IMG/VR virus record: IMGVR_UViG_3300008117_000011
Coordinates: 124,001-188,000 of that record
Strand: one strand, 5' to 3'
Length of the DNA stretch: 64,000 nucleotides
In this document: positions 557-58,907 of the stretch, one piece after another
Position numbering within the stretch: the first letter of the stretch is position 1
How the letters are laid out: each line of letters begins with the position of its first letter
Notes under the pieces: model-generated
Database searches by the model: none
Seen by the model: only the letters and a program-made list of their open reading frames with translations
What the model was told of the DNA's origin: nothing
Position numbers and translations under genes: made by a program

Positions 557-575
557 TCTTTTTAATAATAAATAA

Positions 576-1556
576 TTACTTTTTTGTTTTTTGAATAAAT
601 GATTTCATTAATTCAATATACTTTATTGTTGATGAATTTTTATCAATATAATCAAAATGATTTTCATTTTTAATTAGACATTCAATTGGGTCAATATTTA
701 TGTATTCACCTTTATAGAATTTTGTTGATTTTAAGTCGTCGGTTACTCCTGCCATATGAAGTATTGGGCACTTTTCATATTTTTCAATGTTATCAGTTGC
801 CCAAGAAAAATTAAGATCCTTAATAACACTTGTTTTGTTTCCATTAAGCCAAAGGTTCCAAAGAAGCGACCACATTTCTGCAGTCCAAAATTGTATCTGC
901 CCTGGATTGATCGGGAACCTTTTTTGATATGAGTGCATTTGAAAATACAATGGTGTTGAGTCTTCGTATATTTTATACCACAACTTGGAGTCAGTATTTT
1001 TTACAATATATTGGCCACCCCCAGAATTTTCTTGATTTTCTTTTATCACATTTACATCAATTCCAATAACATCAGCCATTTCACTTAATAGTTGTCCTTT
1101 CTTAGAATTTTTATGTTGCCTTTCATATCTATCACAACAGTCAATAATGTAATTATATCCAATGTATCCTATGGTGTCTGAAAGGTATGATATATCATCT
1201 TTTAATAATGTTTCAAAATCTGGTAATTCTCTAAAAATAATATCAGCATCGTGAAGAAAAAATGATTTACCAAATTGTGGATATTCTTCAAGCCATCTTG
1301 AAATTAAATATGGTTTTATACTTGGTATATATGTTTTTTTTCTTCTACTATCTTCATAGAAATGTATATTAACCCCAAGATTTAAAAGTTCTTTAGCACC
1401 TTCGGATGGTTCTTTTGCTCCGTGGACCATTGCTAGTATTACGTGAATATTTTTTGGGTTAATTCCTTTTTCAATAAAATTATGAACATATAACTTTATT
1501 TGCCAATGAAAATAAGAAACATCTGGTTGTGCGGATACAAAAACTAAATCTTGCAT
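576..1556 (-). CDS. Glycosyltransferase, GT-A fold, HPAT/SERGT1 (GT95/GT96)-like
   Basis: Ordered motifs YFHWQ, YIPSIKPY, hydrophobic strand + DAD (FFLHDADIIFR), GYIG, GGGQY, WTAEMWS and ILH. These parallel plant peptidyl-serine galactosyltransferase/Hyp arabinosyltransferase motifs as I recall them. Confidence 0.7.
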   Translation of the reverse strand: MQDLVFVSAQPDVSYFHWQIKLYVHNFIEKGINPKNIHVILAMVHGAKEPSEGAKELLNLGVNIHFYEDSRRKKTYIPSIKPYLISRWLEEYPQFGKSFFLHDADIIFRELPDFETLLKDDISYLSDTIGYIGYNYIIDCCDRYERQHKNSKKGQLLSEMADVIGIDVNVIKENQENSGGGQYIVKNTDSKLWYKIYEDSTPLYFQMHSYQKRFPINPGQIQFWTAEMWSLLWNLWLNGNKTSVIKDLNFSWATDNIEKYEKCPILHMAGVTDDLKSTKFYKGEYINIDPIECLIKNENHFDYIDKNSSTIKYIELMKSFIQKTKK

Positions 1557-1615
1557 TTATAATTTACTTTAAAATAAATTTAAATGAAATAGTAAAATAC
1601 TGAATAGATTATGTT

Positions 1616-4600
1616 TTAGTTATTTAAATTCTCAAGAGCCGATATTCTATTTTTTAACTCATCTATTACTACTTGTTGTTCTTTTATAGCTTCAACAAGT
1701 AATGGTATCATAGCGTCAGTATGAACACCTTTGTACTGATCAACTTTATTTGTAAATGATAATCTAGGTTCAACAGATTCAACTTGTTGTGCGATAAATC
1801 CAAATCTTTCATCATTTCCACCAGCTTTTCTATCTTTCCATTGATATGTAACACCACTTAGTTGTAATATTGTATCTAAACCACCAGTTATTGGTTTTAT
1901 ATTTTCTTTTAGTCTTTCATCTGATGTATTTGTTGTTAACTTACCTGTTGCATCTATTCTAATGTCATTAACAAAAGCTGAAGTACCCACACTTCTTAAT
2001 GCAATATTTTCAGCTTCTAAGTAATTAACAACATATACCACAGGTTCATTTGTCCCACTAAAAACTGAAGTTGTATCACCAGATGGTAACAAATATAATG
2101 TGTCATCAGTACCACTTGTTCTAAAAATAATTGGACCATCAGATTCATTAACAATAAATAAAGTAGCGTTTGTTGACCCAGTACTAAAATTAGCTTCAAG
2201 AGCTGAGTAGTTACTATATTGAGTTAGTCTAGTATTTAAACTTGGTGATGTTGTACCATTATATAACCTAATATTTGATCCTGCTGACCCAGTTCTTAAC
2301 TGAATATTATTTTCAATTGACGCTGTTTCTGAGTAAATACCAAGTTCATTATTTGGTCCAACTGATAAACCTGGTATAAGACTACTATAAGTGTTATTTG
2401 GTCCTCCAATTCTTACATTTCCGGTTATTCTTGTGTTACCACTAACGTGTAATTTTTCACTTGGTGTTTCCAATCCAAGTCCAATAAAGCCTTTGCTACT
2501 ACCATTACCATCAATAAACATATGTGCGGTAGATAAATCTGGTGTTGTTCCAGCATAAAATCTTATATTATCAAGTGGAACCGATCCAGATGGTGCGTTT
2601 ATAATATTTAAGTTTCTTGTATTTGCTCCGGCATATAAAAACATATCACCATTACCACCATAACCCGGGAATATGGTATCAGTCCAACTTCTCATTCCAA
2701 CGCTACCTCCAGTTGCTGGTTGGACAAAACTATTAAAGGCTATGGTGACATCAAATCTTGGTATTCCAGTACTTGAGAAAATATTAAACCTTCCTCCTGT
2801 TGATGTTGGATCATAGTAAAATTCACTATTTGTTCCGACAACTTGTAAGGGATATTGTGGTGAGTCGGTACCAACACCCAATCTTTCATTTGCTAAGTCA
2901 ACTGTAATCCCACTATTGGACCCAAAATAAACATTTCCTTCATCTAAAGGATTTATATTTAATGGAGAACAAGAATGAATATTATAAACATATAAATCAT
3001 CAACACAATCTGTCGGTGACCCAATTGTTGTCGCAGATATTGTTGTTGCTGATAATCCACCAGTAAACGTTGTTGTTCCAGTTACAATACCACCACTAAA
3101 ACCACCGGTTGTTCCAGTAACAACAAATCCATTTACATCAATTCCTAAATTATTAATTGATGTACCAGTTCCAAGTAAAGATATGTTTAGATATGGTACA
3201 TAAACGGTATCGTCTGTTGTACCAGTTATATTTTGACCACCAATAACCACAGACCTATTACCAGATACAAGTGAATCGCTTGAGTGTATAAATGATCTAC
3301 TACCATTTGCAATTGATTGGTAACCACCAGCGTGTGAAGCATTTCCAGATGCTATTGTAAAATATCCTTCTGTATGTGAAAATGATCCATTCGCTATTGT
3401 TGCATAACCCTCAGCATGTGAAGCACCCCCGCTTGCGAGTGTTGTAATACCCTCTGCGTGTGCCCAAGTAGTTGTCGCACTTGTTTGTTGACCTTCTGAA
3501 TGTGAATAATCACCAGAGGCTGTTGTTTGATAACCTTCTGAATGTGAATAATTACCGGATGCTGTTGTTTGATAACCTTCTGCGTGTGATGTAATACCAT
3601 TGGCAATTGTTAAACCACCTTCTGCGTGTGAACCAAGTCCGGCTGCGGTACCACCACTTATAATATTAAAACCATCATAATAACCACCTTCAGCGTGAGC
3701 TCCTTGATTTGCAGCCAAAGAATAATACCCTTCAGCGTGTGAACGAAGAGTACTGGCAATTGTTGAGTCTCCTTCTGTGTGTGTATAATCACCAAGGGCT
3801 TGGGTAAAAAATCCTTCAGCATGTGAATAATCTCCTTGTGCAATTGTTGAGAGTCCCTCTGCATGTGAAGCGATACCAGTTGCTGTTGTAAGTTGTCCTT
3901 CGGCATGTGAATTATCTCCAGTGGCTATTGTTCCAGCTCCTTCGGCGTGTGACCCAATTCCGGTTGCCGACCCACCACTAAAATAAAAAAATCCATTAAA
4001 ATATCCACCTTCGGCGTGTGATGCAAAACCTCCGGCGATTGACTGGTATCCTTCAGCATGTGATGTGTCACCGCTAGCTATTGTTGAGTCACCTTGTGAG
4101 TGTGAAGCGACACCAATGCTTGTTGTACTAACTCCTTCTGCGTGTGATGTAGCACCATTGGCAATTGTATTATACCCCTCGGTGTGTGATCTTAAACCAA
4201 ACGCACTTGTAGATTCACCTTCGGCGTGTGAAAAATCACCTCCCGCAATAGTTGAATACCCCTCGGCGTGTGCGCTATCACCACTAGTTGTTGTAGAACT
4301 ACCTTCCGCATGTGATGAGGCACCACTAGTTGTTGTAGAACTACCTTCCGCATGTGAAGCAAATCCGGTGGCGTTTGTTTGAATTCCCTCAGCATGCGAA
4401 TAATTACCTTGTGCTATTGTATTGGCTCCTTCAGCATGACTTATTATCCCTAATGCATATGATGTATCACCCTCAGCGTGACTACCTTGTAAAGCTATTG
4501 TTAAAACACCCTCAGCGTGTGAATAATCACTAGCTTGTGTTTGATAACCCTCAGTATGTGAATAATCACCAGCTACAGTCTGAAACCCTTCGGCGTGTGA

Positions 4601-4918
4601 AGTAAGCCCGCTAGCAATTGACCCATCGCCACTTGCTGTTGAGTTATTACCTGATGCTAATGTTTGGTTTCCCCAAGCAACAGCCCTATCACCAGTGGCA
4701 TCAAGTCCGGTTGGGTTTACAGCTTTTATTGAGTCTACACCAGTAGATCCTGATGTCCAATAATCGGTTGGGAATATGACATTACTCAAAACTTGGCCGA
4801 TGCTTGCTTTATATGATGAGCCAGCTGGATTTTGTGATGTATCACCAGTTATGACAATGTGAATTAAATCATTTAATGTTACGCCAGTAGCTAAAGTCCT
4901 ATCGGTAAGAAATGCCAT
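1616..4918 (-). CDS. Trimeric tail fibre/adhesin with YadA-head-like SHAEG repeats and C-terminal peptidase S74 intramolecular chaperone
   Basis: About 30 repeats of a ~14-aa unit SHAEGxxTxAxG. C-terminus has TSDERLKENI...GVTYQWK...GFIAQQVE...LLVEAIKEQQ followed by a coiled coil. Confidence 0.88.
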   Translation of the reverse strand: MAFLTDRTLATGVTLNDLIHIVITGDTSQNPAGSSYKASIGQVLSNVIFPTDYWTSGSTGVDSIKAVNPTGLDATGDRAVAWGNQTLASGNNSTASGDGSIASGLTSHAEGFQTVAGDYSHTEGYQTQASDYSHAEGVLTIALQGSHAEGDTSYALGIISHAEGANTIAQGNYSHAEGIQTNATGFASHAEGSSTTTSGASSHAEGSSTTTSGDSAHAEGYSTIAGGDFSHAEGESTSAFGLRSHTEGYNTIANGATSHAEGVSTTSIGVASHSQGDSTIASGDTSHAEGYQSIAGGFASHAEGGYFNGFFYFSGGSATGIGSHAEGAGTIATGDNSHAEGQLTTATGIASHAEGLSTIAQGDYSHAEGFFTQALGDYTHTEGDSTIASTLRSHAEGYYSLAANQGAHAEGGYYDGFNIISGGTAAGLGSHAEGGLTIANGITSHAEGYQTTASGNYSHSEGYQTTASGDYSHSEGQQTSATTTWAHAEGITTLASGGASHAEGYATIANGSFSHTEGYFTIASGNASHAGGYQSIANGSRSFIHSSDSLVSGNRSVVIGGQNITGTTDDTVYVPYLNISLLGTGTSINNLGIDVNGFVVTGTTGGFSGGIVTGTTTFTGGLSATTISATTIGSPTDCVDDLYVYNIHSCSPLNINPLDEGNVYFGSNSGITVDLANERLGVGTDSPQYPLQVVGTNSEFYYDPTSTGGRFNIFSSTGIPRFDVTIAFNSFVQPATGGSVGMRSWTDTIFPGYGGNGDMFLYAGANTRNLNIINAPSGSVPLDNIRFYAGTTPDLSTAHMFIDGNGSSKGFIGLGLETPSEKLHVSGNTRITGNVRIGGPNNTYSSLIPGLSVGPNNELGIYSETASIENNIQLRTGSAGSNIRLYNGTTSPSLNTRLTQYSNYSALEANFSTGSTNATLFIVNESDGPIIFRTSGTDDTLYLLPSGDTTSVFSGTNEPVVYVVNYLEAENIALRSVGTSAFVNDIRIDATGKLTTNTSDERLKENIKPITGGLDTILQLSGVTYQWKDRKAGGNDERFGFIAQQVESVEPRLSFTNKVDQYKGVHTDAMIPLLVEAIKEQQVVIDELKNRISALENLNN
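3270..4700 (-). repeat. Coding tandem repeat array, mostly 42-bp (14-aa) period, within the fibre gene
   Basis: 37-bp identical copies at 4279-4315 and 4321-4357. Further near-identical 42-bp-spaced copies around 3491-3582. Confidence 0.9.
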
Positions 4919-4930
4919 ATTTTTTTATTT

Positions 4931-4937
4931 ATAAATA
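4931..4937 (-). promoter_or_regulatory. TATTTAT motif upstream of the fibre gene (representative of about 17 copies)
   Basis: The same heptamer lies in sense orientation 4-45 nt upstream of most intergenic-preceded starts (listed in findings). Confidence 0.6.
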
Positions 4938-4949
4938 CAATAAAATTTA

Positions 4950-5252: not shown

Positions 5253-5264
5253 TATTTTTATGTA

Positions 5265-10468: not shown

Positions 10469-11376
10469 TATCCAGTAATATTATTAAAAGCTTTACTAAA
10501 ATCTATATTTGTTCCACGATCCTGTCTAACCTCATAAAGAAGTGAATTAAATTGATCACGAATTTCATATAAATTGTATTGTTTATATATGTTATTTTGT
10601 GTATCGTAGATTGTATAAATACCATCATCAATTGACTTGGTTTGATTACCATAAAGTGCAATTGCAAGTGTTGAGATATCTTGATCAACTATTTCAATCT
10701 CCGTTGTTATTGGATTGAAGAATGTGTTTGTTATTATGATATTCTGGTTTGGTTGTCCAATAAATGGTGTTGCGCTTGGTTTGTTTGTTGGTGATGTTGA
10801 TGGTGATAATGTACAAAAAATTAAATTTGTTGCGTTTTCAACATATCTATATCTAATAACTTTTTGTGATGTATTTGTTAAATTTTGATAAATTGGTTCA
10901 CAATAAAATGATGAGGTAATTAATCTAAAGAAATTAGGAATTTTTGTACCATTATCATTTAAATACTCAACTCTAAAACCAACAAGTCCCTGGTTAACGA
11001 ATTTATTTTTAAATTGTGTTGGTACATTTGTAATATCAATTACAATTCCTTTAACATTTGGTAGTGCTGATAAAACACCACAATCTGTAATTTTTGTTCT
11101 AATTTCTGCCGGTCTAATATAAAGTGTATATATTCCAAGTTTATTAAAAACATCAGCGGGTAATTTTAAATTATATAAACCACCAAGAATTTCAACACCA
11201 TTGTTTCCTCCGGTATTTGTATTATGGAAATATGGTCTTAGCACATTTTTTGCGTCAAGTTTTGTTAACAAAAAATTATTTGTATCGTCTCTTGATGGTG
11301 TATAATTTAGTATTATATCAACATCTTCTGGTGATACATCTGCTGGTCTTATGGTTCCATATGTTCCCGTGGCCAT
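10468..11376 (-). CDS. Hypothetical structural protein
   Basis: 302-aa ORF with TATTTAT upstream (11409-11415), translationally coupled to the wedge gene. Confidence 0.65.
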   Translation of the reverse strand: MATGTYGTIRPADVSPEDVDIILNYTPSRDDTNNFLLTKLDAKNVLRPYFHNTNTGGNNGVEILGGLYNLKLPADVFNKLGIYTLYIRPAEIRTKITDCGVLSALPNVKGIVIDITNVPTQFKNKFVNQGLVGFRVEYLNDNGTKIPNFFRLITSSFYCEPIYQNLTNTSQKVIRYRYVENATNLIFCTLSPSTSPTNKPSATPFIGQPNQNIIITNTFFNPITTEIEIVDQDISTLAIALYGNQTKSIDDGIYTIYDTQNNIYKQYNLYEIRDQFNSLLYEVRQDRGTNIDFSKAFNNITG

Positions 11377-11421
11377 ATTGTTTAGTTTTTACTTTTGTTT
11401 ATCTTTTTATAAATAGTGTAG

Positions 11422-21176: not shown

Positions 21177-21248
21177 TAAATGTTTTTTTGATAAATAGTT
21201 TATTTCCTATTTTCAAAAAAATAATCTCTTTTTAAAAAAAATAAATCG

Positions 21249-23471: not shown

Positions 23472-23506
23472 ATGTAATAAATATAATGTTGTGATATTTT
23501 ATATAA

Positions 23507-23538
23507 ATAAAAAAAATCACTGATTTCTCAGTGATTCT
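23507..23538 (-). terminator. Intrinsic terminator (9-bp stem, GAAA loop, long U tract)
   Basis: Minus strand AATCACTGA-GAAA-TCAGTGATT-TTTTTTT, overlapping the stop of 23517..23747. Confidence 0.85.
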
Positions 23539-24418: not shown

Positions 24419-24461
24419 ATTTCACAAGTATTTGTTATTATATATAAATATATTGTGAAAT

Positions 24462-27772: not shown

Positions 27773-27811
27773 AATTTTTTATTCCTTTAGTAAAGATAAA
27801 TACTACGTGGA

Positions 27812-33153: not shown

Positions 33154-33192
33154 AATTTCTTTTATTTATAAATATCATTAAGTTATAAAAAA

Positions 33193-45108: not shown

Positions 45109-45156
45109 TTATTTCATTTTAATATAAATAGATTGTTGTTACTTTTTATAAAAATA

Positions 45157-47194: not shown

Positions 47195-47219
47195 TTTTTA
47201 TTTTATAAATACTTTCTTA

Positions 47220-48117: not shown

Positions 48118-48161
48118 AACTTTTTTATTATAAAAATACTTGACTTATGTTTTTTGTAAAT

Positions 48162-48701: not shown

Positions 48702-48766
48702 AGTTTTTTAATTTTTAATTATGTTTATTTTTTATTATAAATATATCCGTAATAAATTTTTTCTAT

Positions 48767-49720
48767 TTACTTTGATTTAATTTTGGATACAATTCTATTA
48801 ATTAAGTTCTCTATTATTATTCCTTCATTTAATTCCTCTTCTTTATTATCAGTTTCTATATGAATTTTTGTATATCCTCCTTCTGAAGTATCTTGAATTA
48901 TAAATTTAACTTCTGGATACATCCTTGATAATTCATTTCTTACAAATTCTATCATAGCTTTAACATTCCTTGGGTCATCGTCTGAAAACCCTAATGAAGC
49001 ACTAACATATTTGCCACTTCTAATTAAGTCGTCATATTTTGAAATAAAGTCCGCGAGGGCCACCTTTTTGTTATGTTCAGGGTTTGCCGCACCACCACTA
49101 ACTTCTAAACCAAATCTTTCTCCAAACTCCGGAGATGAAACCGGGTAGTAATCCCCTTTTTCGTCAAGATATAAATCAAGAATTTGATTTTTATCCAAAT
49201 ACTCTAATTTTTCAATAAAATCATCACTAAATTCATTTTCGTGTTTTAAAGTGTCAATAATATTTTCTAACATTTTTTCTTTTTCTTCTGGTGACAATAC
49301 TAAATGAATAAACATTTTAACACCCTTTTTAAGTACTTCTGGGTTGTGACCTCTAGCTGTAATAATTGAAAATGGATTAGCGTAAATTAAACTTTCTTTA
49401 AATTTGTTAAAACTTGGGGATTTTTTATTTTTAAGTATTGCCTCTTTTGAGTCTCTTAAAAAAGTGTCCGGTAATGTAAAATCAATAAAAGCCTCTTTTG
49501 GGTTGTTATTTCTTACTCTATAATCTGGTTCTGTTCTAATCTCCGCAAATTTTTCAGTTGACACCTCAATTGGTTTCCATCTTTTACCAACTTTTTGATC
49601 CATTTTGATTTTGGTCGGCATTTGTAAAATATTATCGTCCCAGTCAAAAGCATAGAGTCTTAACTTTCTATTGCTTTTCATCTCTAAAAGAATTTCTCTA
49701 ACTAATTTTTTGTGATTCAT
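48767..49720 (-). CDS. HAD-superfamily hydrolase-like protein
   Basis: Motif I AFDWDDNI, motif II IITARG, conserved Lys (EHNKK), motif IV GFSDDD. Confidence 0.75.
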   Translation of the reverse strand: MNHKKLVREILLEMKSNRKLRLYAFDWDDNILQMPTKIKMDQKVGKRWKPIEVSTEKFAEIRTEPDYRVRNNNPKEAFIDFTLPDTFLRDSKEAILKNKKSPSFNKFKESLIYANPFSIITARGHNPEVLKKGVKMFIHLVLSPEEKEKMLENIIDTLKHENEFSDDFIEKLEYLDKNQILDLYLDEKGDYYPVSSPEFGERFGLEVSGGAANPEHNKKVALADFISKYDDLIRSGKYVSASLGFSDDDPRNVKAMIEFVRNELSRMYPEVKFIIQDTSEGGYTKIHIETDNKEEELNEGIIIENLINRIVSKIKSK

Positions 49721-49741
49721 AATAATAAATATTATATAAAT

Positions 49742-49772
49742 AAAAAAAGGGAGAACTTGTCCCCCTTTTTCC
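49742..49772 (-). terminator. Intrinsic terminator after the tail sheath gene
   Basis: Minus strand AAAAAGGGGGAC-AA-GTTCTCCCTTTTTTT. Confidence 0.75.
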
Positions 49773-49786
49773 TTATTCTATTTTTA

Positions 49787-52700
49787 TCACACATCCTCAA
49801 ACGAAGCACCTGTTGGTGTGATGTAGAAGGTAATGTCAATAAATTCAAGAGATTTTGTAGGTTTGATATAGATTTTACCAACAAGTTGGTTTTTATCTAA
49901 ATCTTCTGTACTATTAGAAACTGTTACTCTAAAGTCATACAAACCTCTATCTCTTCTAATTGCATCAAGAATTGGGTTAACCGCATTCAAGAAGTCCTGT
50001 CTTACTTGTTGATCATTTTGATCAAACAATAGCCTTACAGAAACCGCAGAAATCAACTTACGAGCTTGTAGTAACAATCTTCTTACGTTAATTCTGTCAA
50101 GAGCAGATTCTCTTACTTGTAGAGTTTTGTTACCCCAGATTACAGTACCAACATCAGAGAAAGTTGCAATTGGGTTAATTCTACCAAGGTAAAGAACATC
50201 TCTATCTTCTTGTGTCAACTTCTTACGAGCTTTAACCGCATTAACAATACCACGAGTATAACCAGCGGCCGCAAACCAAGGGAATGCAATGTTATCAGTT
50301 AACGCCAAGTTTCTTGTAACTTCAGCTGTTGGTGGTATGTAGATTTGTGTATTATTCACAGTATCTCTTGTTAATACCCAAGGATAATAAGTTGCTGTGT
50401 AGTTAGAATCAATTCCTGTTTCTTCTAACAAGTCAACAGCTTCTTGTGGGTAAATTAAACCATCAGATTCAGTTGTTGTTGCTTGGAACATATTAAAGTC
50501 TGGCATTGTTGTTACATAAAGTGAGTCAGCTCTTTCGTTCTCAATCATATCAATTGTACCCTCAACAAGACCGGAGTTATTGTAAAGATCAATACCCGGT
50601 GTTGTAAATACATTGATGTTAACAGCTTCAGGATTTGCAAATGTTCTAATACCTAACATATAAGCATAGTAATCTGTGTTACCGTATTCCACACTACCAT
50701 CACCGATAGATATTTGTTTGAATAGTCCGTTTCCAGTACCATTAGGGTATCTTGTTGATGTGCACGCTCCTTTTAAGAAACCAGATCTACCAAGAGTAAA
50801 CTTATCTGCGTTTGTTCTATATTCTCTATAGATGTCCCATCCGTCAAATCCACCATAAACAAATACTGTGAATTTTCTTGAGTTTAATCTGTAGTAAGGA
50901 TTCTCAGGGTCAGTTGGTTCAGAAGAGAATGATGTATTACCAACCTCAAACGCTGGAGTTCCAGATGATGCGTAAACACTTGAAATTGTTACAGCACTAG
51001 CGAATTGGTCCATATGGTATCCTTTTGTTTGGAAATCCCATTCAACACCTTCACCAGTACAAAGATTAAGAGGTCGTCTTTTTCCTTTATATTGGAAGAA
51101 ATCACTATCGTAACCCCAGAATGATGAAAGTCCAAGATATGTTCTTCTTACGTTATCCCCAGGACTTGTAAATACATCGTCAATTCCGTTAGATAATCCA
51201 AATGGTGGGTTATAAACAACTTCACCAGGTATATCATATTTAGTTTTGTAAACTGGGAATGGAGATGTTACTCCCGGATATTCTCTAAATGTATAACCTC
51301 TAAATCCACAAGGAAGAGCGTCAATTGGTGCGTCCTCATTCATCTCTATTAAAATGTATTTAGAATTCAACACGTATTCACCATCAAGAGTTCCTACTTT
51401 TTTAGCGATGAAATTATTTTCTTGTGGGTTCATAGAACAATTTGTGAACTTTTCAAGAACTGTTGGGTTAGCATCACTATCAAAATAATCTCTAATCAAT
51501 AATGTGAATGTTAAATTATTAAATGAAATATCAGAAATTGACACTTTAATTTCAGTGTTTGCTGAATTACCATCAGAAATGCTATAAACTTTAAATAAGT
51601 TGAATACTTTATTACCTCTAACTTCAGAAACAACCCAAGGTGTTACAGGGGACTGGAATCTATCTAAATACCATCCAATTGTATTAGGGTCATTTGCTTG
51701 AGCTTCTTCTGTTGTTACAAGTTCAGAACTTAATCCTCTAATAAATCCTTTATTCCATCCATAACTTAAAAGAGTTTGGAAATTTTCTTCAACCATAAGT
51801 GGTGTTTGTAATCTTGGTTTACCAAAGTTACTTTTCCCAAATACTTTATTGATATTTTTAGAGTCGTTTGAAGACAATGAAACCTCAAAGTCAAAATCAG
51901 TACCAACTTTATTTGTCGCATTGATTGCAAATTTAGCGAAAGGATTTTTCTTAACTGAAGAATAAACACCTGTCATATCTAAAGTAACATCAGTAACACC
52001 AGTGATTTCGTAAACTGGGTTAACATCAGTACTATAAGTTGAGATACCTCTTGATCTTAAAGTTACAACAACTAAGTCATCATATTCAGTGTATGATGTT
52101 CCAGTGTAATAATAGATAACACCAGTAACATTACCAGAATAGCACTCATTTACAATTGGGGCTGTTGGTGTTGGCGTTGGTGGAACTGGAGTTAAAGTAA
52201 CACAAGGATCTGGTGTTGGTGTTGGCGTTGGTGCCGCACTTGTTGTTGTGGTTGTAACCGGTGTTATATTTGTTAAATCCGTTACTGTTGTAAAGAATGA
52301 ATAACCAGTATAAAGACCTGAACCAACATTGTCCATAAGGGCATAATACCAAGCATCGTTAAGTGGTGATGAAGTGTCTAAAGATTCAAAAGGAATTGAC
52401 TCAACACCAAAAACATTTGTTTCTTGTGTATATCCTGTTGTACTTAAATATGTGTAATCACTTTCTGGTATAGCACCAAAATAGTAAACAACCTCATCTT
52501 CCGCAGTTGATGGGTTACTACTTGTTATCACATCTGAGACCATTAAACTAATTTGGTCATCAAGAGTTGTGATGTCACCATCTAACTCTTCATATTCCTC
52601 AGTCAACATACTTTCAATGTCAGACGGAAAAGCACCTAAGAATAATACGTTAGTTGGATTGAGTGTACAAGCACTAAAAGGAATTGAGAATGACAATTCT

Positions 52701-53122
52701 TTTTTAACAACACATACTGGTTCACAATCAACTGTTACACCACTTAAACAAAAATAATCCAATGTTTTAGGATCTAAGTTAGCTTTAGTTACAATTGACC
52801 AAGATGGACCCGCATCATATCCGGATAATCCTAATATTCTTGTTACAAATAATTGATTTGATTGTTGTAAATATGACTTAGCAATATATGCCGCTTCATA
52901 TTTAGGGATTTGTGTATTTACAAATTTTTCTGGTGAAGTTCCACCGAAATAAACTTGGAATTCGTCGTAGTTCTTAACAAAGATTGGTTCAAATGCTGGA
53001 CCCCTTAAAGTCTCACCGGCAATACCTAATGTGGTAACACCAACACTTTGTGCAACGAAACTCAAATCTACTTCAGAAGTGTACACACCTGGTGATACAA
53101 AAACTTTACTGTTAGTAGCCAT
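49787..53122 (-). CDS. Contractile tail sheath protein (gp18-like) with large inserted domain
   Basis: FVSPGVYTSEVD N-terminus; YYPWV, WFAAAGYTRG, INPIATF...WGNKTL...LDRINVRRLL and IKPTKSLEFI. Confidence 0.95.
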   Translation of the reverse strand: MATNSKVFVSPGVYTSEVDLSFVAQSVGVTTLGIAGETLRGPAFEPIFVKNYDEFQVYFGGTSPEKFVNTQIPKYEAAYIAKSYLQQSNQLFVTRILGLSGYDAGPSWSIVTKANLDPKTLDYFCLSGVTVDCEPVCVVKKELSFSIPFSACTLNPTNVLFLGAFPSDIESMLTEEYEELDGDITTLDDQISLMVSDVITSSNPSTAEDEVVYYFGAIPESDYTYLSTTGYTQETNVFGVESIPFESLDTSSPLNDAWYYALMDNVGSGLYTGYSFFTTVTDLTNITPVTTTTTSAAPTPTPTPDPCVTLTPVPPTPTPTAPIVNECYSGNVTGVIYYYTGTSYTEYDDLVVVTLRSRGISTYSTDVNPVYEITGVTDVTLDMTGVYSSVKKNPFAKFAINATNKVGTDFDFEVSLSSNDSKNINKVFGKSNFGKPRLQTPLMVEENFQTLLSYGWNKGFIRGLSSELVTTEEAQANDPNTIGWYLDRFQSPVTPWVVSEVRGNKVFNLFKVYSISDGNSANTEIKVSISDISFNNLTFTLLIRDYFDSDANPTVLEKFTNCSMNPQENNFIAKKVGTLDGEYVLNSKYILIEMNEDAPIDALPCGFRGYTFREYPGVTSPFPVYKTKYDIPGEVVYNPPFGLSNGIDDVFTSPGDNVRRTYLGLSSFWGYDSDFFQYKGKRRPLNLCTGEGVEWDFQTKGYHMDQFASAVTISSVYASSGTPAFEVGNTSFSSEPTDPENPYYRLNSRKFTVFVYGGFDGWDIYREYRTNADKFTLGRSGFLKGACTSTRYPNGTGNGLFKQISIGDGSVEYGNTDYYAYMLGIRTFANPEAVNINVFTTPGIDLYNNSGLVEGTIDMIENERADSLYVTTMPDFNMFQATTTESDGLIYPQEAVDLLEETGIDSNYTATYYPWVLTRDTVNNTQIYIPPTAEVTRNLALTDNIAFPWFAAAGYTRGIVNAVKARKKLTQEDRDVLYLGRINPIATFSDVGTVIWGNKTLQVRESALDRINVRRLLLQARKLISAVSVRLLFDQNDQQVRQDFLNAVNPILDAIRRDRGLYDFRVTVSNSTEDLDKNQLVGKIYIKPTKSLEFIDITFYITPTGASFEDV

Positions 53123-53219
53123 AGTTTTAAAAATGTTTTATTAATTTATTTTAATAATAAATATTAGTAATTTTCGTAAAAACTTTACTTCTTATAAACT
53201 ATTTATATTTTGGTAAGAA

Positions 53220-53241
53220 TTTTTTCTACCTTTTTTCTACC
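53220..53241 (+). repeat. 11-bp tandem direct repeat TTTTTTCTACC x2, candidate operator
   Basis: 53220-53230 and 53231-53241, ending one base before the ATG at 53243. Confidence 0.7.
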
Positions 53242-53242
53242 T

Positions 53243-53407
53243 ATGGAAAATAAGCCAAAAAAGATAAAAAATTTAAAGATTTCTGTTGAAGCTCATAACA
53301 CTCTAAAGAGTTATTGTGATAAACGTGGTATCAAAATGTATAAGTTTTTAGAGAACTTAATCTTTGAGAAATGTAAAGAAAAAAGAGATATCTACGGAGA
53401 GAATTAA
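53243..53407 (+). CDS. Small ribbon-helix-helix-like DNA-binding protein
   Basis: KNLKISVEAHNTLKSYCDKRGIKMYKFLENLI fits a beta-alpha-alpha pattern. ATG at 53243 preferred over the upstream start at 53210. Confidence 0.65.
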   Translation: MENKPKKIKNLKISVEAHNTLKSYCDKRGIKMYKFLENLIFEKCKEKRDIYGEN

Positions 53408-54441: not shown

Positions 54442-54444
54442 TTA

Positions 54445-54957
54445 TTATAATCCTCTAAATTCATTAGGTCCAACAGGAGCCGCAGTGATACTTTTATAGA
54501 ATGGACGAATTCCTCTGTATGTGTGTTTAAAATCAGAAGTTACTCTACCATCATTTACAACAGTATAATATCTTACAAAATTTTCACTATCATAATATCC
54601 TATATAATCACCAAGATCAATATCAATCCCTAAATCTTCTAAAGTTTTTAGATAAACAGATATCGTAATGTTTCCGGGTTCAAGTTGTGCATTTTTTGTT
54701 GTTCCAACCGTTTTATTTTCTGGTGCCAATACTTGGATATACGCATTAAACTCAATTGGTGGCAAAAACTTTATACCATCTGAAACAGTTTCACCATACA
54801 CATCATCTGTTTTTGTTTTTAACCTATCAACTTTATATAACACACAAGTAAAATTTAAATCACCAATTAACCATTCTTGACCCATTTCTATTTCAAGATT
54901 AAAATCGGTATCCCCAAAAAATTTACCAAGTCTTGTTACAGGAATTCTATTTTCCAT
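54445..54957 (-). CDS. Neck/head-closure protein (gp14-like)
   Basis: DDVYGE...FLPPIEF...GDYIGY...YYTV pattern; position next to the gp15-like gene. Confidence 0.6.
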   Translation of the reverse strand: MENRIPVTRLGKFFGDTDFNLEIEMGQEWLIGDLNFTCVLYKVDRLKTKTDDVYGETVSDGIKFLPPIEFNAYIQVLAPENKTVGTTKNAQLEPGNITISVYLKTLEDLGIDIDLGDYIGYYDSENFVRYYTVVNDGRVTSDFKHTYRGIRPFYKSITAAPVGPNEFRGL

Positions 54958-55016
54958 ATTGATTATTTATTGATAAATATTCTTTTTTTGTTTATTTTTA
55001 TATATATTATTTAGTT

Positions 55017-56777
55017 TTGGATTTAAAAAATAATCTAATAGAACACAAAGCTCTTGATTTGTTAGACTCGTATAGTGGTGCTAACAATTATATCCTTTAT
55101 ATGAAATCAAAAAAGGATGTAAATAAAAAGTTCTACCCCACAAGAACTCAGGCTGATTATATTATTAATTATTTTGATGTAAAACCAAAGGTTGCAAGGA
55201 AGTGGGTTGATCTTGATTCTTATTTTGCAAATAAGTTTGCTAAAGATAGATACCTACTTGAAATACCAGAAAAAGTTTATATTGAAAAACTACTTGTTGA
55301 AAAAGATAAGTCCTACCATATTTGGGGTAAGTTCTTTGAGAAGGATAATTTATCAGAATTTTGGGTACCAAAATCATCATTAATAAAATCACATACGATA
55401 GAAAAGGTTGATATTGATTATTCTAAATATGGTCACAGACCACCTTTGTCTCACCAAAAAGAAGCGATAGAAAAACTTGTTGGGTCAAAAAGATTTATAT
55501 TGGCAGACGATATGGGGCTTGGAAAAACAACCTCTACAATTATTGGAGCTCTTGAGACTGGTGCTAAAAAAATTCTAATCATATGTCCAGCGTCACTTAA
55601 AATTAACTGGGAAAGAGAAATAAAAAACTATACCGATAGGAGTGTTTACATTTGTGAAGGAAAAAAATACTCAACAGATGAAGATTTTACAATTGTAAAC
55701 TATGACATATTAAAAAACTTTTACGATCCTAAAGACAAAGAAAATTCTGAACTTGTTAAAACAAAATATGATTTAGTAATTTTAGATGAAGCCCATATGG
55801 TTTCAAACGCTCAAGCTCAAAGAACAAAAATTATTAACAATTTTGTTAAAGATATAAAACAAGTTTGGCTTTTGACTGGAACACCAATGACATCAAGACC
55901 AATCAACTATTATAATCTTCTTAATATTATTGAAAGTCCGGTGGCACAAAACTGGATGGCGTATGCAATTCGTTATTGTCAGGGGTATCAGTTTAGAGCT
56001 GGTAATAGAAAAGTATGGAACGTAACCGGGGCTTCAAATCTTGAAGAACTCCGAGATAGGACATCAAAACAAATTCTTCGTAGATTAAAAGAAGAGGTGT
56101 TAGATTTACCTGAAAAAATAATAACCCCGGTTTATTTAAGAACCTCATCAAGAGAGTATAAAGATTTAATGGGTGAGTACTACGAGTGGTTAAAAAACAA
56201 AAAAGAAGAATCATCATCTCTTACAATTCAGTTCACAAAACTTATGAAAGTAAGAAAGGTAATCGCAAATGAAAAAGTTAAAGACACAATTGAGTTCGCA
56301 CAAAATATTATAGACCAAGGAAAAAAAGTAATCATATTTACAAATTTTACCGATACCCTACAACTAATTCATAATCACTTTGGTAAAGAATCGGTGTATC
56401 TTGATGGTAGTTGTAATAAAGTACAAAGACAATATGCTGTTGATCAATTCCAGGATAATGAAAAAATTAAAGTTTTTGTTGGTAACTTAAAAGCCGCTGG
56501 TGTTGGTCTTACATTAACCTCAGCCGAAGTTGTAATAATGAATGATTTATCTTTTGTTCCTGCGGAACACGCACAAGCTGAAGATAGGGCTTACAGATAT
56601 GGTCAAAAAAATAATGTACTTGTTTATTACCCAATATTTGAAAACACAATAGAAGGTGTTGTGTATGATATTTTAAATACAAAGAAAAAAATAATAGGGA
56701 CTGTAATGGGTGATGAGGTTACAGAATCTTTTGACGTTGTTGAAGAAATCCTAAATCTTATAAACTCAAAAAGGTAG
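55017..56777 (+). CDS. SNF2-family helicase/ATPase (SMARCAL1/ZRANB3-like)
   Basis: LADDMGLGKT, ICPASLKINW, ILDEAH, LTGTP, AAGVGLTLT, QAEDRAYRYGQ. Confidence 0.93.
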   Translation: MDLKNNLIEHKALDLLDSYSGANNYILYMKSKKDVNKKFYPTRTQADYIINYFDVKPKVARKWVDLDSYFANKFAKDRYLLEIPEKVYIEKLLVEKDKSYHIWGKFFEKDNLSEFWVPKSSLIKSHTIEKVDIDYSKYGHRPPLSHQKEAIEKLVGSKRFILADDMGLGKTTSTIIGALETGAKKILIICPASLKINWEREIKNYTDRSVYICEGKKYSTDEDFTIVNYDILKNFYDPKDKENSELVKTKYDLVILDEAHMVSNAQAQRTKIINNFVKDIKQVWLLTGTPMTSRPINYYNLLNIIESPVAQNWMAYAIRYCQGYQFRAGNRKVWNVTGASNLEELRDRTSKQILRRLKEEVLDLPEKIITPVYLRTSSREYKDLMGEYYEWLKNKKEESSSLTIQFTKLMKVRKVIANEKVKDTIEFAQNIIDQGKKVIIFTNFTDTLQLIHNHFGKESVYLDGSCNKVQRQYAVDQFQDNEKIKVFVGNLKAAGVGLTLTSAEVVIMNDLSFVPAEHAQAEDRAYRYGQKNNVLVYYPIFENTIEGVVYDILNTKKKIIGTVMGDEVTESFDVVEEILNLINSKR

Positions 56778-56808
56778 AAATAACCTAATTTGTATATTTA
56801 TTATATAA

Positions 56809-58890
56809 ATGAGAGTTAAAGTAAAACACGTAAAATGTGATATGTCTGAAAAGGACAAAGAACTTATGAACGATTTTATTAAGTTCTTACAGAAGAAGTA
56901 TCCTTTAAAGGATGATATTACTATTATTTTTACCGGTGAAAGATATGGTAAAATGTCCACAGGTAGTAGGACACAAGATTCTGAACTTAAGATTTTCACT
57001 AAAGACAGAATGAATAGGGATATTGTAAGAACATTAGCTCACGAATGGATACACGAAAGACAAATTAAAATCCAAGGTAAAAAACCAAAACAAGATATTG
57101 GTGGTCCCCTTGAAGATGAGGCAAACGCAAAAGCTGGTTCTGCAATTAAACAGTTTGAAAAGGAGTTTCCAAAAAAAGAAGAGTTAATGTACGAAGGTAT
57201 AAATAATAAGTTAAATCTGATTAACGAGCAAATCTTATTAAAGGAAAAGGAAAATATTAAAGGTGAGTTTTTAACCGAAATGAAAAAAATCGGTATTGAA
57301 AAATTACCTTATTCATATTCAGCTTTAAAACAATTTGTGGATCCGGAAACAATGGATATTCATTACAACAAACACTATAAAGGTTATGTCAAAAAATTAA
57401 ATGACGCTCTTTCTAATAAAAAAGGTGAAATGGAGCTTGAGGATATTGTAAAAACAATATCAAAGTTTAACACTAAAGTTAGAAACAATGCTGGTGGTGC
57501 TTTTAATCACGCGTTATTTTGGAAAATGTTATCACCAAAAAAACAATTACCAAAAGGTGAGATATTAGAAAAAATTACAAAACAATATGGTAACATCAAA
57601 AAAATGAAAGATGAATTCAATGATGTTGCTAAAGAAAGATTTGGGTCCGGATGGGTTTGGCTTGTTTTAACAAAGACAAATAGACTTAAAATTATGTCAA
57701 CACCAAACCAAGATAATCCACTTATGAATGTTATTAAAGATGGTGGATATCCACTTTTAGGTTTAGATTTATGGGAGCATGCTTATTATTTGAAGTATAG
57801 AAATAAAAGGGATGAATACATTAAAAATTTCTGGAATTCTGTAAACTGGGAATTTGTAAATGAACTTTTTGTTTCAAAGACAACAAAAAAGTTAAATGAA
57901 TCATATATGAAAATTTTATTAGAAAACGAGGATTTACAACCAGATCTGAAAAAAATTATGAGTCGTGAATTACAAAAAATTAGACTTATACCATTAGATG
58001 CTGAGGCAGGAGCCGAAGCAATTAACAACATTACAACAGCTGAAATTTCAAGGGGGAACCTTGACTTTAATAGGACTATAAGTGGACTTATGACTCTTGA
58101 TTTATCAACTGTTTCTGAAAGATCAAAATATAGATTTAATAATTATTTTCAAAGATTTATTAAAAGCAAAACTAGAGGTTTTGACTTTGAGGGTATGGTT
58201 ACCGGATTTCTTGATGGTGAACTAGCAACAAGCTTATCGTCTCCTTATGATATCTCAACATCAGAGGGAGATTTAATTTCTTGTAAAGTAGTTAGAGACA
58301 CTAATGAAAGAATATCACTTAAAAGTATTAGGACTGGGGTTAAAGATTTTGTTGAGAAATACGAAGGGTCAGAAGAAAATAAATATATATTAAGTGGGTT
58401 AACTCAATTTCCAAATTTTTTAGAACTAGTTGTAACACACGAAAATTCAGATATACAAAATCAAGGTGAAGATATTTTAAACAAATTACTTATTGATATT
58501 ACAGGATTACTTGTTGGTGTACCAAACTCACAAAATCTTGGGGTTGATTTATACTACTATGATAAAGCTCGTCTAATTGAACTTGCTAAAACACCAGGAA
58601 TTCTAAAAGCTGGAAGATCAGCTGAAGCTCAAACAATATCCTATTCGGCTAAAATACTTAAAATGGGTACAACCAAAAGTGGGTTTATTCAGTTTCCGAT
58701 TGTTACTCAAGAACAATATGCCGAATTTTTAATTGGTAATGAAAAAACAAAAGAAATTGTAAATATTTTTAACACTATGGGTGAAAAATATGGAGTCCCA
58801 AGATTAGGTGACAATATCCCACAAGATATTATTAGGGATTTATCAAAAAATGAAAGATTCAAATTAGATATTAGAAGAATACTTAAATAA
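56809..58890 (+). CDS. Three-domain fusion: HExxH zincin-like domain + Fe/Mn superoxide dismutase + PD-(D/E)xK-like domain
   Basis: RTLAHEWIH...LEDEANAKAG. SOD ligands HYNKHY, NNAGGAFNH, FGSGWVWL, NQD, DLWEHAYY. C-terminal RGFDFEG...PYD...ISCK. Confidence 0.85.
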   Translation: MRVKVKHVKCDMSEKDKELMNDFIKFLQKKYPLKDDITIIFTGERYGKMSTGSRTQDSELKIFTKDRMNRDIVRTLAHEWIHERQIKIQGKKPKQDIGGPLEDEANAKAGSAIKQFEKEFPKKEELMYEGINNKLNLINEQILLKEKENIKGEFLTEMKKIGIEKLPYSYSALKQFVDPETMDIHYNKHYKGYVKKLNDALSNKKGEMELEDIVKTISKFNTKVRNNAGGAFNHALFWKMLSPKKQLPKGEILEKITKQYGNIKKMKDEFNDVAKERFGSGWVWLVLTKTNRLKIMSTPNQDNPLMNVIKDGGYPLLGLDLWEHAYYLKYRNKRDEYIKNFWNSVNWEFVNELFVSKTTKKLNESYMKILLENEDLQPDLKKIMSRELQKIRLIPLDAEAGAEAINNITTAEISRGNLDFNRTISGLMTLDLSTVSERSKYRFNNYFQRFIKSKTRGFDFEGMVTGFLDGELATSLSSPYDISTSEGDLISCKVVRDTNERISLKSIRTGVKDFVEKYEGSEENKYILSGLTQFPNFLELVVTHENSDIQNQGEDILNKLLIDITGLLVGVPNSQNLGVDLYYYDKARLIELAKTPGILKAGRSAEAQTISYSAKILKMGTTKSGFIQFPIVTQEQYAEFLIGNEKTKEIVNIFNTMGEKYGVPRLGDNIPQDIIRDLSKNERFKLDIRRILK

Positions 58891-58900
58891 GATATTAAAG

Positions 58901-58907
58901 TATTTAT
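58901..58907 (+). promoter_or_regulatory. TATTTAT motif upstream of the neck gene
   Basis: The motif switches strand with gene orientation (also 56795-56801 on +). Confidence 0.6.

What the first reader, a model, noticed from the sequence alone, without database searches (positions are those of the whole stretch)
568..58907. TATTTAT heptamer marks most gene starts and is the reverse complement of the T4 late promoter
Seen in sense orientation shortly upstream of starts at 568, 4931, 11409, 21191, 23477, 24444, 27796, 33168, 45124, 47205, 48737, 49725, 53157 and 54973 (minus strand) and 53200, 56795 and 58901 (plus strand). It follows gene orientation and is absent before ssb and polB. Established: T4 gp55 reads TATAAATA, whose reverse complement is TATTTATA. 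Inference: a lineage-specific late promoter read by a phage sigma factor. The copy before dnaB-nrdJ shows it is not purely structural.
Basis: partly seen in the sequence, partly recalled or inferred. Interest (0 to 1): 0.6.

Follow-up and report, generated by a model that had tools for sequence, protein, structure and literature searches.

The report
Strict phage promoter motif TATTTAT
A near-invariant eight-base signal (V-TATTTAT) sits just upstream of about two thirds of the transcription units in this ~305-kb freshwater phage and its many uncultured relatives; it is most likely a phage-specific promoter, a two-base variant of the phage T4 late promoter, read with a phage-encoded sigma factor.

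Summary
All 17 listed sites are exact and face the downstream gene. The heptamer is not enriched in the window as a whole (46 found, 46 expected). It is concentrated in upstream intergenic DNA on the sense strand: window 16:2, genome 41:7 against about 8 expected, z = 12.

The window belongs to a T4-superfamily jumbo phage, about 305 kb once an overlapping contig is joined, probably infecting Bacteroidota. The motif is strict: every single-base variant loses the strand bias. It has no -35 partner, is absent from translationally coupled gene starts, and is conserved before orthologues in relatives at about 49% protein identity. A distant relative, G001, uses AATATATA instead.

A second class, the Bacteroidota host-type TAnnTTTG, precedes other genes, including the operon of a host-like phage sigma-A copy.

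The "reverse complement" point is a red herring. Read directly, TATTTATA is the T4 late promoter TATAAATA with AA changed to TT.

No phage RNA polymerase was found. Three phage sigma genes exist. The likeliest reader is a divergent gp55-like sigma encoded just beyond the record's end. This is inferred, not shown, and no transcription start could be mapped. I rate it a new variant of a known kind.

The parts
568..574 (-). P site (TATTTAT), 11 nt before the ATG of gene 2-556
4931..4937 (-). P site, 12 nt before the ATG of the tail-fibre-like gene 1616-4918; part of the composite TATTTATAAATA (4926-4937)
11409..11415 (-). P site, about 31 nt before gene 10468-11376
21191..21197 (-). P site, 14 nt before the 2005-aa gene 15159-21176
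23477..23483 (-). P site, 5 nt before the ATG of gene 23010-23471 (leaderless-type spacing); a second copy lies at 23503-23509
24444..24450 (-). P site, 25 nt before the HNH endonuclease gene 23807-24418
27796..27802 (-). P site, 23 nt before the DnaB-like helicase gene 26387-27772, followed by the ribonucleotide reductase gene 24506-26365
33168..33174 (-). P site, 14 nt before gene 32929-33153; conserved before the orthologues in G003 and G002
45124..45130 (-). P site, 15 nt before the 1703-aa gene 39997-45108; conserved in G003 and G002
47205..47211 (-). P site, 10 nt before the 588-aa gene 45428-47194; conserved in G003 and G002
48737..48743 (-). P site, 35 nt before the tail tube gene 48213-48701; conserved in G003 and G002. 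The gene is covered exactly by a metatranscriptome contig
49725..49742 (-). Two P sites (49725-49731 and 49736-49742), 4 and 15 nt before gene 48767-49720, directly after a terminator-like hairpin; invariant before orthologues at 33-47% protein identity
49742..49772 (-). Intrinsic-terminator-like hairpin plus T run that ends the sheath transcription unit just upstream of the P sites
53157..53163 (-). P site, 34 nt before the tail sheath gene 49787-53122; conserved in G003 and G002
53200..53206 (+). P site, 3 nt before the small ORF 53210-53407, in a divergent region
54973..54979 (-). P site, 15 nt before gene 54445-54957; conserved in G003 and G002
54964..54970 (+). P site, 46 nt before the helicase gene 55017-56777, in a divergent region
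56795..56801 (+). P site, 7 nt before gene 56809-58890
58901..58907 (+). P site, 14 nt before gene 58922-60049; conserved in G003 and G002
63411..63439 (-). Contrast case: the polB gene (60420-63380) has no P site. It has TTGACA-17-TATACT behind a terminator

Best explanation
V-TATTTAT-W (V = not T, W = A or T, never G) is the single recognition element of a phage-specific promoter class. I call it P.

How it sits:
- It lies at about -12 to -5 relative to the transcription start, on the non-template strand, facing the gene.
- It has no -35 partner.
- It often follows directly after the terminator of the preceding unit.
- The start codon comes either 4-7 nt after the heptamer, which would give leaderless or nearly leaderless mRNA, or about 14-15 nt after it.

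How it most likely works:
- The phage has no RNA polymerase of its own, so the host core enzyme is redirected by a phage sigma factor.
- Early genes carry the host (Bacteroidota) type promoter TAnnTTTG. These include the operon of a phage sigma-A copy whose DNA-reading helices are host-like.
- P drives the virion and lysis genes and a minority of replication genes.
- P is most likely read by a divergent gp55-like sigma. Its gene lies about 7 kb beyond the right end of the assembled record and is conserved throughout the clade.
- In sequence, P is the T4 late promoter TATAAATA with the central AA changed to TT.

Shown: the motif's statistics, strictness, strand, spacing, conservation and segregation from the host-type class; the presence and nature of the sigma genes; the absence of detectable polymerase genes.

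Inferred: that P is a promoter, its timing, the leaderless starts, and which sigma reads it.
For: **Enrichment and strand.**
- The record shows 41 sense to 7 antisense against 7.9 expected.
- The joined 305-kb genome shows 61:10, relative G003 71:7 and relative G002 47:14.
- Eighty diverged tail-module loci show 195:28.
- ATATTTAT in 80 sigma loci shows 131:16.
- VTATTTAT in 80 gp55-like loci shows 105:3.

**Strictness.**
- Every single-base variant has a sense:antisense ratio near 1:1.
- VTATTTAT gives 155:7.
- G at position +8 occurs in 2 of 232 sites, and there is no -35 element.

**Not a translation signal.**
- P occurs at 3 of 466 coupled gene starts.
- It occurs at 26-44% of starts that follow an intergenic gap.

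**Phylogenetic footprint.**
- The heptamer is invariant 4-6 nt before the ATG of orthologues at 33-47% protein identity, while the flanks vary.
- P presence is conserved between orthologues: odds ratio 14, p = 1e-10.

**A second promoter class.**
- TAnnTTTG matches the published Bacteroidota consensus T-12 A-11 T-8 T-7 T-6 G-5, with the start 4-5 nt downstream (PMC6847099).
- It clusters where P is rare.
- It is conserved before the sigma-A-like operon in 73 of 80 loci.

**Transcription machinery.**
- No RNA polymerase families were detected.
- The sigma-A-like protein has regions 2.4 and 4.2 nearly identical to Bacteroidota sigma-A. It is therefore expected to read TAnnTTTG, not P.
- The ECF-like sigma is absent from the near-complete relatives G003, G006 and G007 (CheckV 99-100%).
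- The gp55-like sigma matches the gp55 profile weakly. Its N-terminal domain superposes on T4 gp55 at Z 9.2, rmsd 2.9 A, over 96 residues, among about 20 consecutive sigma hits.
- It is present in a near-identical contig that bridges the record's ends and in at least 355 IMG/VR stretches.

**Comparison with a distant relative and with T4-like phages.**
- Relative G001 has a gp55-family hit, no sigma-A-like gene and no P (3:12).
- It uses AATATATA at the same spacing.
- T4-like phages are known to vary their late promoter along with gp55, as in Aeh1 (PMC1524935).
Against: - No transcription start was mapped. The only RNA data were assembled contigs, which show that the tail tube gene is represented but not where transcripts begin.
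- The gp55-like assignment rests on weak sequence scores (E from 1e-3 to 1e-5) and a model of pLDDT 66. Its Z of 9.2 ties with S. aureus sigma-B.
- The same protein seems to have a sigma-4-like C-terminal domain, yet P has no -35 element.
- No gp45-type clamp was found. That search did not ring in any control either, so it is uninformative. gp33 was not tested.
- With strict T4 geometry (element at -13 to -6), the commonest spacing would start transcription inside the ATG. The spacing fits host sigma-A geometry better.
- P also precedes non-late-looking genes (DnaB-RNR, helicase, many small ORFs in the left arm). 'Late' may really be 'middle plus late'.
- Gene calls are my own longest-ORF calls, so some start codons may be wrong.
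Confidence: 0.6

Rival explanations
1. P is a promoter, but its reader is the phage sigma-A-like (RpoD-like) protein rather than the gp55-like sigma. Host sigma-A would express this protein early from the conserved TAnnTTTG promoter, and it would then redirect core polymerase to P.
For: - The protein is clade-wide and unusually conserved: 80-89% identity in more than 360 contigs, while a neighbouring structural protein is at 32-47%.
- Its operon has a conserved host-type promoter in 73 of 80 loci, as expected for the first step of a cascade.
- The P-to-ATG spacing matches sigma-A geometry.
- P begins with TA like the host -7 element.
- G001 lacks both this sigma and P.
Against: - Its regions 2.4 (FISYAVWW.KQSI.QSL) and 4.2 (LTKERVRQIKEKALRRLR) are almost identical to those of Bacteroidota sigma-A. 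This predicts TAnnTTTG/TTTG specificity.
- P has A where the host element has its invariant T-7, and it excludes G-5.
- P has no -33/-35 element, although this sigma keeps an intact region 4.
Confidence: 0.2
2. P is simply a strong variant of the host -7 element. It would be read by unmodified host sigma-A, or by host sigma-A retargeted by a small phage co-factor in the manner of T4 AsiA/MotA, with no dedicated phage sigma.
For: - P shares T-12, A-11, T-8 and T-6 with TAnnTTTG in the same register and at the same distance from the ATG.
- An AT-rich patch about 14-17 nt upstream of P recalls the AT-rich tracts reported upstream of F. johnsoniae promoters.
Against: - In F. johnsoniae the six positions T-12, A-11, T-8, T-7, T-6 and G-5 are nearly invariant. 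P has A at -7 in all sites by definition and G at -5 in 2 of 232.
- No single-base variant that moves P towards the host consensus keeps the strand bias.
- The two classes are spatially separated in the genome.
Confidence: 0.1
3. The heptamer acts at the RNA level, as a UAUUUAU element for translation initiation, ribosomal protein S1 or bS21 binding, or RNase processing, rather than as a promoter.
For: - It lies close to start codons in a host phylum that does not use Shine-Dalgarno sequences.
- Its spacing shows preferred classes at 4-7 and 14-15 nt.
Against: - It is absent from 463 of 466 translationally coupled gene starts, which also need translation initiation.
- The spacing ranges from 3 to about 60 nt.
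- It often lies directly after terminators.
- An 8-position invariant element with T excluded at -1 is more typical of protein-DNA recognition.
Confidence: 0.05
4. P is read by the ECF-like sigma (192 aa, record coordinates 17573-18151, minus strand).
For: It is a clear sigma with regions 2 and 4, encoded by this phage.
Against: - It is found only in this lineage (7 loci).
- It is absent from the near-complete relatives G003, G006 and G007 (CheckV 99-100%); G003 clearly uses P and G006 and G007 are close members of the same clade.
- ECF sigmas normally need a -35 element.
- Its own gene sits behind a P site.
Confidence: 0.03

Closest known systems
T4-type late promoter (TATAAATA at -13 to -6) read by gp55 with gp33 and the gp45 clamp
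   Same: - A single, strictly conserved, AT-only 8-mer at the -10 position with no -35 element.
- It precedes virion and lysis genes in a T4-superfamily myovirus.
- 6 of 8 positions are identical in the same orientation.
- A gp55-like sigma is encoded by the clade.
- Lineage-specific drift of this promoter together with gp55 is documented for Aeh1 (PMC1524935).
   Different: - The central two bases are TT, not AA.
- T4's own sequence is not used in sense orientation (16:106).
- The candidate sigma is 250 aa with an extra sigma-4-like domain and is barely alignable to gp55.
- No gp45-type clamp was detected.
- The spacing to the ATG suggests a start one base closer to the element.
- The host is probably Bacteroidota.
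Bacteroidota sigma-A (sigma-ABfr) promoter: -33 TTTG and -7 TAnnTTTG
   Same: - The same register and distance to the start.
- Shared T-12, A-11, T-8 and T-6.
- A weak or absent upstream hexamer, with AT-rich tracts upstream.
   Different: - The invariant T-7 is replaced by A.
- The invariant G-5 is excluded.
- Positions -10 and -9 are fixed as TT.
- The true host-type element is also present in this genome as a separate class.
Phage sigma cascades such as Bacillus phage SPO1 (gp28, gp33/34)
   Same: Host core polymerase is reprogrammed step by step by phage-encoded sigma factors that recognise phage-specific promoter classes.
   Different: - SPO1 promoters are bipartite (-35 and -10).
- Here one sigma is a near copy of the host primary sigma, and the main phage class is a single element.
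AT-rich promoters of phiKZ and AR9 jumbo phages read by phage multisubunit RNA polymerases
   Same: Short AT-rich, lineage-specific promoter elements in jumbo phages.
   Different: Those phages encode their own RNA polymerases. None was detected here, and the clade encodes sigma factors instead.

Membership tests
T4-type late promoter / gp55 system | A single conserved element of about 8 bp at about -10, with no -35 element | tested here: met
   Logo of 232 sites from three genomes: 7 invariant positions plus biased flanks, and no upstream hexamer. All single-base variants lose the strand bias.
T4-type late promoter / gp55 system | Sequence TATAAATA on the non-template strand | tested here: not met
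   The sense sequence is TATTTATA (106:16). TATAAATA in sense orientation gives 16:106. Six of eight positions are shared.
T4-type late promoter / gp55 system | The phage encodes a gp55-family sigma | tested here: inconclusive
   - Profile hits to phrog_234 at E 6.5e-5 to 4e-3.
- hhalign against T4 gp55: E 0.0044 over 40 columns.
- phmmer: E 1.7e-4.
- Structural Z 9.2 to T4 gp55 (7d7d_F), tied with sigma-B.
- The gene is in contig G008, not in the window's record.
T4-type late promoter / gp55 system | gp33 co-activator and gp45 sliding-clamp coupling | tested here: inconclusive
   phrog_223 (gp45) found nothing in G000, G008, G003 or G001, but the search rang in no control either. gp33 was not searched.
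T4-type late promoter / gp55 system | Precedes late (virion, lysis) genes and is active late | tested here: inconclusive
   - P precedes sheath, tube, baseplate, tail-fibre, Hoc-like and endolysin-like genes.
- It also precedes DnaB-RNR, a helicase and many small ORFs.
- Timing cannot be tested with these tools.
T4-type late promoter / gp55 system | Transcription starts about 6 nt downstream of the element | not testable with these tools
   Only assembled metatranscriptome contigs were available.
Bacteroidota sigma-A promoter (TTTG / TAnnTTTG) | Near-invariant T-12, A-11, T-8, T-7, T-6 and G-5 | tested here: not met
   In the matching register P has A at -7 and G at -5 in only 2 of 232 sites.
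Canonical sigma-70 promoter (TTGACA-17-TATAAT) | Bipartite -35 and -10 hexamers | tested here: not met
   P sites have no -35 element. Sigma-70-type matches are not enriched: 101 found against 96.3 expected.
Promoters of phage-encoded RNA polymerases (T7-like, phiKZ/AR9-like) | The phage encodes its own RNA polymerase | tested here: not met
   No hit to RNA_pol_Rpb2_6, RNA_pol_Rpb1_2 or T7-type RNA_pol in the record. The T7-type search had no positive control. The 81 kb recovered from G008 was not searched for these families.

The most novel reading that the evidence does not exclude
An abundant, uncultured clade of ~300-kb freshwater Bacteroidota phages runs a three-tier programme on host core polymerase.
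- Tier 1: host-type TAnnTTTG promoters. They may also be served by a phage copy of the host primary sigma that has a shortened region 3, perhaps to outlast a shut-off of host sigma-A.
- Tier 2: an almost invariant single-element promoter, V-TATTTAT-W, read by a gp55 relative that has kept a sigma-4-like domain.

Many of the resulting mRNAs would be leaderless. That would tie phage-specific transcription to a phage-specific mode of translation initiation in a phylum without Shine-Dalgarno use. The distant relative G001 has retuned the same element to AATATATA. Together these would give a natural series for studying how gp55-type sigmas change specificity.
Probability: 0.3. Interest if true: 0.7.

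Novelty: new variant of a known kind. Interest (0 to 1): 0.55.

Why it matters
- **Annotation and timing.** A strict 8-base promoter shared by hundreds of uncultured jumbo-phage contigs gives an immediate handle for annotating transcription units. It also allows phage gene timing to be read from lake metatranscriptomes.
- **T4 late-promoter paradigm.** A second natural variant (AATATATA) is available for comparison.
- **Synthetic biology.** The motif could serve as an orthogonal promoter-sigma pair in Bacteroidota, where standard bacterial parts do not work.
- **Host prediction.** The presence of the host-type TAnnTTTG class, the lack of Shine-Dalgarno sequences and a host-like sigma-A copy independently point to a Bacteroidota host.

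Tried and rejected
- **Nucleotide search.** Megablast of 10 kb of the window against GenBank phages found no match. There is no cultured close relative. The sheath gene hits only distant T4-like phages at about 30%.
- **Literature.** Full-text searches found no phage promoter described as TATTTAT. The paper on bS21 phages of freshwater Bacteroidetes never mentions sigma factors or promoters. A regex search for bS21 in four genomes found nothing, so any link to that clade is untested.
- **RNA polymerase.** Searches for multisubunit and T7-type polymerase families in the record were negative.
- **Reads.** One run search found two freshwater metatranscriptomes holding 7-12% of the words. Laying them gave exact contigs over the tail tube gene but no information on transcript starts.
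- **Clamp.** The gp45 clamp search was negative without a positive control.
- **Canonical sigma-70 promoters.** They are not enriched. A few near-perfect ones exist, but I could not establish them as a third class.
- **A P site 39 nt before the gp55-like gene.** It is not conserved in four relatives, so I rejected it as chance.
- **Foldseek on the gp55-like model.** It gave only weak E-values, although nearly all hits were sigma factors. The exhaustive structural search was clearer.
- **Giant ORFs.** PHROG and Pfam scans left the 2005-aa and 1703-aa ORFs without a family. The 2162-aa ORF had only a weak tail-protein hit. The idea that they might be a virion RNA polymerase has no support.
Full report
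**1. What the window is**

The 64-kb window is positions 124001-188000 of a 223,671-bp IMG/VR viral record with 31% G+C.

- Its genes include a tail sheath, tail tube, baseplate wedge and hub, and tail-fibre-like proteins. It also encodes a DnaB-like helicase, ribonucleotide reductase, a helicase of the PHROG 'DNA helicase' family and a family-B DNA polymerase.
- The sheath protein finds only distant T4-like phages at about 30% identity. No close cultured relative exists.
- The record is a fragment. Contig G008 (154,296 bp) matches both ends of the record at about 100% identity and adds 81,441 bp. The joined genome is about 305,112 bp.
- Start codons have no Shine-Dalgarno sequences upstream and are preceded by A-rich leaders.

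**2. The observation**

All 17 listed sites are exact and lie 3-35 nt upstream of a same-strand start codon.

The heptamer is not enriched in the window as a whole: 46 found against 46.05 expected. The enrichment lies in upstream intergenic DNA on the sense strand.

| Sequence set | Sense : antisense |
|---|---|
| Window, one-directional upstream segments | 16 : 2 |
| Record (223.7 kb) | 41 : 7 |
| Joined genome (305 kb) | 61 : 10 |

- In the window, 18 of 27 upstream segments carry the motif in sense.
- For the record, an order-1 Markov model of the same AT-rich segments expects 7.9 (z = 12). An order-3 model expects 17.9 (z = 5).
- 39% of all VTATTTAT copies in the joined genome lie in sense orientation within 60 nt of a start. 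Intergenic DNA is only 6% of that genome.

**3. Anatomy of the motif**

I pooled 232 sites from three genomes.

- The consensus is V-TATTTAT-W.
- A is preferred at -1 (150 of 232), and T is avoided there.
- G is almost excluded at +8 (2 of 232).
- There is a weak AT-only patch 13-17 nt upstream.
- A is enriched 5-7 nt downstream.
- There is no -35-like element.

None of the 21 single-base variants of the heptamer shows a sense bias comparable to the exact motif. VTATTTAT gives 155:7.

The spacing to the ATG has two modes, at 4-7 nt and at 14-15 nt, with a tail out to about 60 nt. In relative G002 only the 13-17-nt class exists.

Many sites follow directly after a GC-rich hairpin and T run.

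P is found at 3 of 466 translationally coupled gene starts. It is found at 26-44% of starts that follow an intergenic gap. It therefore marks transcription units, not translation starts.

**4. Conservation in relatives**

- Before orthologues of gene 48767-49720, at only 33-47% protein identity, the heptamer is invariant 4-6 nt from the ATG wherever an intergenic gap exists. The flanking bases differ.
- Eighty tail-module loci give 195:28.
- Eighty sigma loci give 131:16 for ATATTTAT.
- Eighty gp55-like loci give 105:3 for VTATTTAT.
- Whole genomes G003 (317 kb, CheckV 100% complete) and G002 (270 kb) give 71:7 and 47:14.
- P presence is conserved between orthologues at about 49% identity: odds ratio 14, p = 1e-10. 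The genes that keep P in all three genomes include the sheath, the tube and other genes of the same gene cluster.
- A more distant relative, G001 (249 kb), lacks P (3:12). It uses AATATATA at the same spacing (AATATAT 29:3).

**5. A second promoter class and the host**

Other intergenic regions carry TAnnTTTG, often with TTTG about 20 nt upstream. Several lie only 4 nt from the ATG.

This is the published Bacteroidota consensus: T-12 A-11 T-8 T-7 T-6 G-5, with the start 4-5 nt downstream and a weak -33 element (PMC6847099).

The stretch of small genes at about 67-88 kb of the record has no P at all. The wider 60-100 kb has only six, against 4-10 per 20 kb in most other bins. TAnnTTTG sites are commonest in the first 100 kb.

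If both elements are aligned by their distance to leaderless-type ATGs, they fall in the same register:

| Position | -12 | -11 | -10 | -9 | -8 | -7 | -6 | -5 |
|---|---|---|---|---|---|---|---|---|
| Host type | T | A | n | n | T | T | T | G |
| P | T | A | T | T | T | A | T | W |

**6. The transcription machinery**

No RNA polymerase families were detected in the record. Three sigma-like genes exist.

(a) *Sigma-A-like protein, 274 aa (record 108762-109586, minus strand).*
- It has regions 1.2, 2 and 4.
- It is 80-89% identical in more than 360 contigs.
- Its best cellular relatives are Bacteroidota and other FCB-group sigma-A proteins at 39-44%.
- Its regions 2.4 and 4.2 are nearly identical to theirs, and region 3 is about 24 residues shorter.
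- Its operon is preceded by TAnnTTTG in 73 of 80 loci.

(b) *ECF-like sigma, 192 aa (record 17573-18151).*
- It sits behind a P site.
- It is confined to this lineage and absent from the near-complete genomes G003, G006 and G007.

(c) *gp55-like protein, 250 aa.*
- It is encoded about 7 kb beyond the record's right end in contig G008.
- It is conserved at 61-78% in G002, G003, G006, G007 and at least 355 IMG/VR stretches.
- Sequence similarity to gp55 is weak.
- In the structural search its N-terminal domain ties T4 gp55 (7d7d_F) and sigma-B at Z 9.2, at the top of about 20 consecutive sigma hits. Its C-terminal domain resembles sigma region 4.
- It has no conserved promoter of its own and lies inside a long operon.

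**7. Interpretation**

P has the position, strand, strictness, terminator context and conservation expected of a promoter. It is distinct from the host-type class.

Read in the same direction, TATTTATA differs from the T4 late promoter TATAAATA only at the two central bases. G001's AATATATA also shares 6 of 8 positions with it.

The sigma-A-like protein keeps host-type DNA-reading helices. The ECF sigma is not clade-wide. The gp55-like sigma is therefore the most plausible reader of P. The known co-variation of late promoter and gp55 in Aeh1 is a precedent (PMC1524935).

This assignment is an inference. The spacing fits sigma-A geometry slightly better than T4 geometry. The candidate sigma has a region-4-like domain with no matching -35 element. 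No clamp was found. 'Late' is also only partly apt, because P precedes DnaB-RNR, a helicase, homing endonucleases and many small ORFs as well.

**8. Expression data**

Two freshwater metatranscriptomes hold parts of the region. Exact contigs cover the tail tube gene. Contigs cannot show transcript starts.

**9. Verdict**

The feature is best filed as a new variant of the T4-type single-element late promoter, in a phage that probably infects Bacteroidota and carries three sigma genes. The reader of the motif and its timing remain to be shown by experiment.

Noticed in passing
whole record; contig G008 (loci L227-L234): The 223.7-kb record is incomplete. A 154-kb IMG/VR contig matches both of its ends at about 100% identity and adds 81,441 bp, giving a circular or circularly permuted genome of about 305 kb.
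   Followed up: yes
record 110103-110160 (minus strand), outside the window; loci L005-L084: A Bacteroidota-type promoter (TTTG-N20-TATCTTTG) precedes the small gene upstream of the sigma-A-like gene. The TAnnTTTG element is conserved at this place in 73 of 80 related loci, although the flanks diverge.
   Followed up: yes
record 108762-109586 (minus strand), outside the window: The phage sigma-A-like protein is far more conserved (80-89%) than structural proteins (32-47%). It keeps host-like regions 2.4 and 4.2 but lacks about 24 residues of region 3. It may be a phage replacement for host sigma-A.
   Followed up: partly
record 106210-108793 (minus strand), outside the window: Three consecutive C-5 cytosine DNA methyltransferase genes lie directly downstream of the sigma-A-like gene.
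   Followed up: no
window 63411-63439 (-); record 40648-40718 (+) and 215834-215941 (+): Near-perfect canonical sigma-70-type promoters occur at a few places: TTGACA-17-TATACT before polB, TTGACA-17-TATAAT, and TTGACT-17-TATAAT. Such matches are not enriched overall. Whether they form a third promoter class is open.
   Followed up: partly
genome G001 (loci L181-L193): A distant relative that shares the tail gene lacks TATTTAT (3:12) and the sigma-A-like gene. It has a gp55-family hit and uses AATATATA at the same distance from start codons.
   Followed up: partly
window 15159-21176, 33193-39681, 39997-45108 (all minus strand): Three giant ORFs of 2005, 2162 and 1703 aa sit in the virion module. 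They have no Pfam or PHROG family apart from one weak tail-protein hit.
   Followed up: partly
window 23807-24418 (-); record 66270-67022 (-): Homing-endonuclease-like genes (HNH type and GIY-YIG type) each have their own P site. The second is the only P site in the otherwise P-free stretch of small genes at about 67-88 kb.
   Followed up: no
window 4926-4937 and 33163-33174: The composite TATTTATAAATA contains the motif on both strands. These two copies account for both of the antisense counts in the window's one-directional upstream segments.
   Followed up: no
window 48140-48150 (-), upstream of gene 47353-48117: This baseplate-hub-like gene is preceded by a terminator and by TATTTTTAT instead of TATTTAT. 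That variant has no strand bias genome-wide (14:9), so its promoter is unexplained.
   Followed up: partly
window 48234-48709: A 491-nt contig from a freshwater metatranscriptome matches the tail tube gene without a mismatch. It then continues for 15 letters unlike the window, starting 8 nt upstream of the ATG. This may be strain variation in the leader or a library artefact.
   Followed up: no
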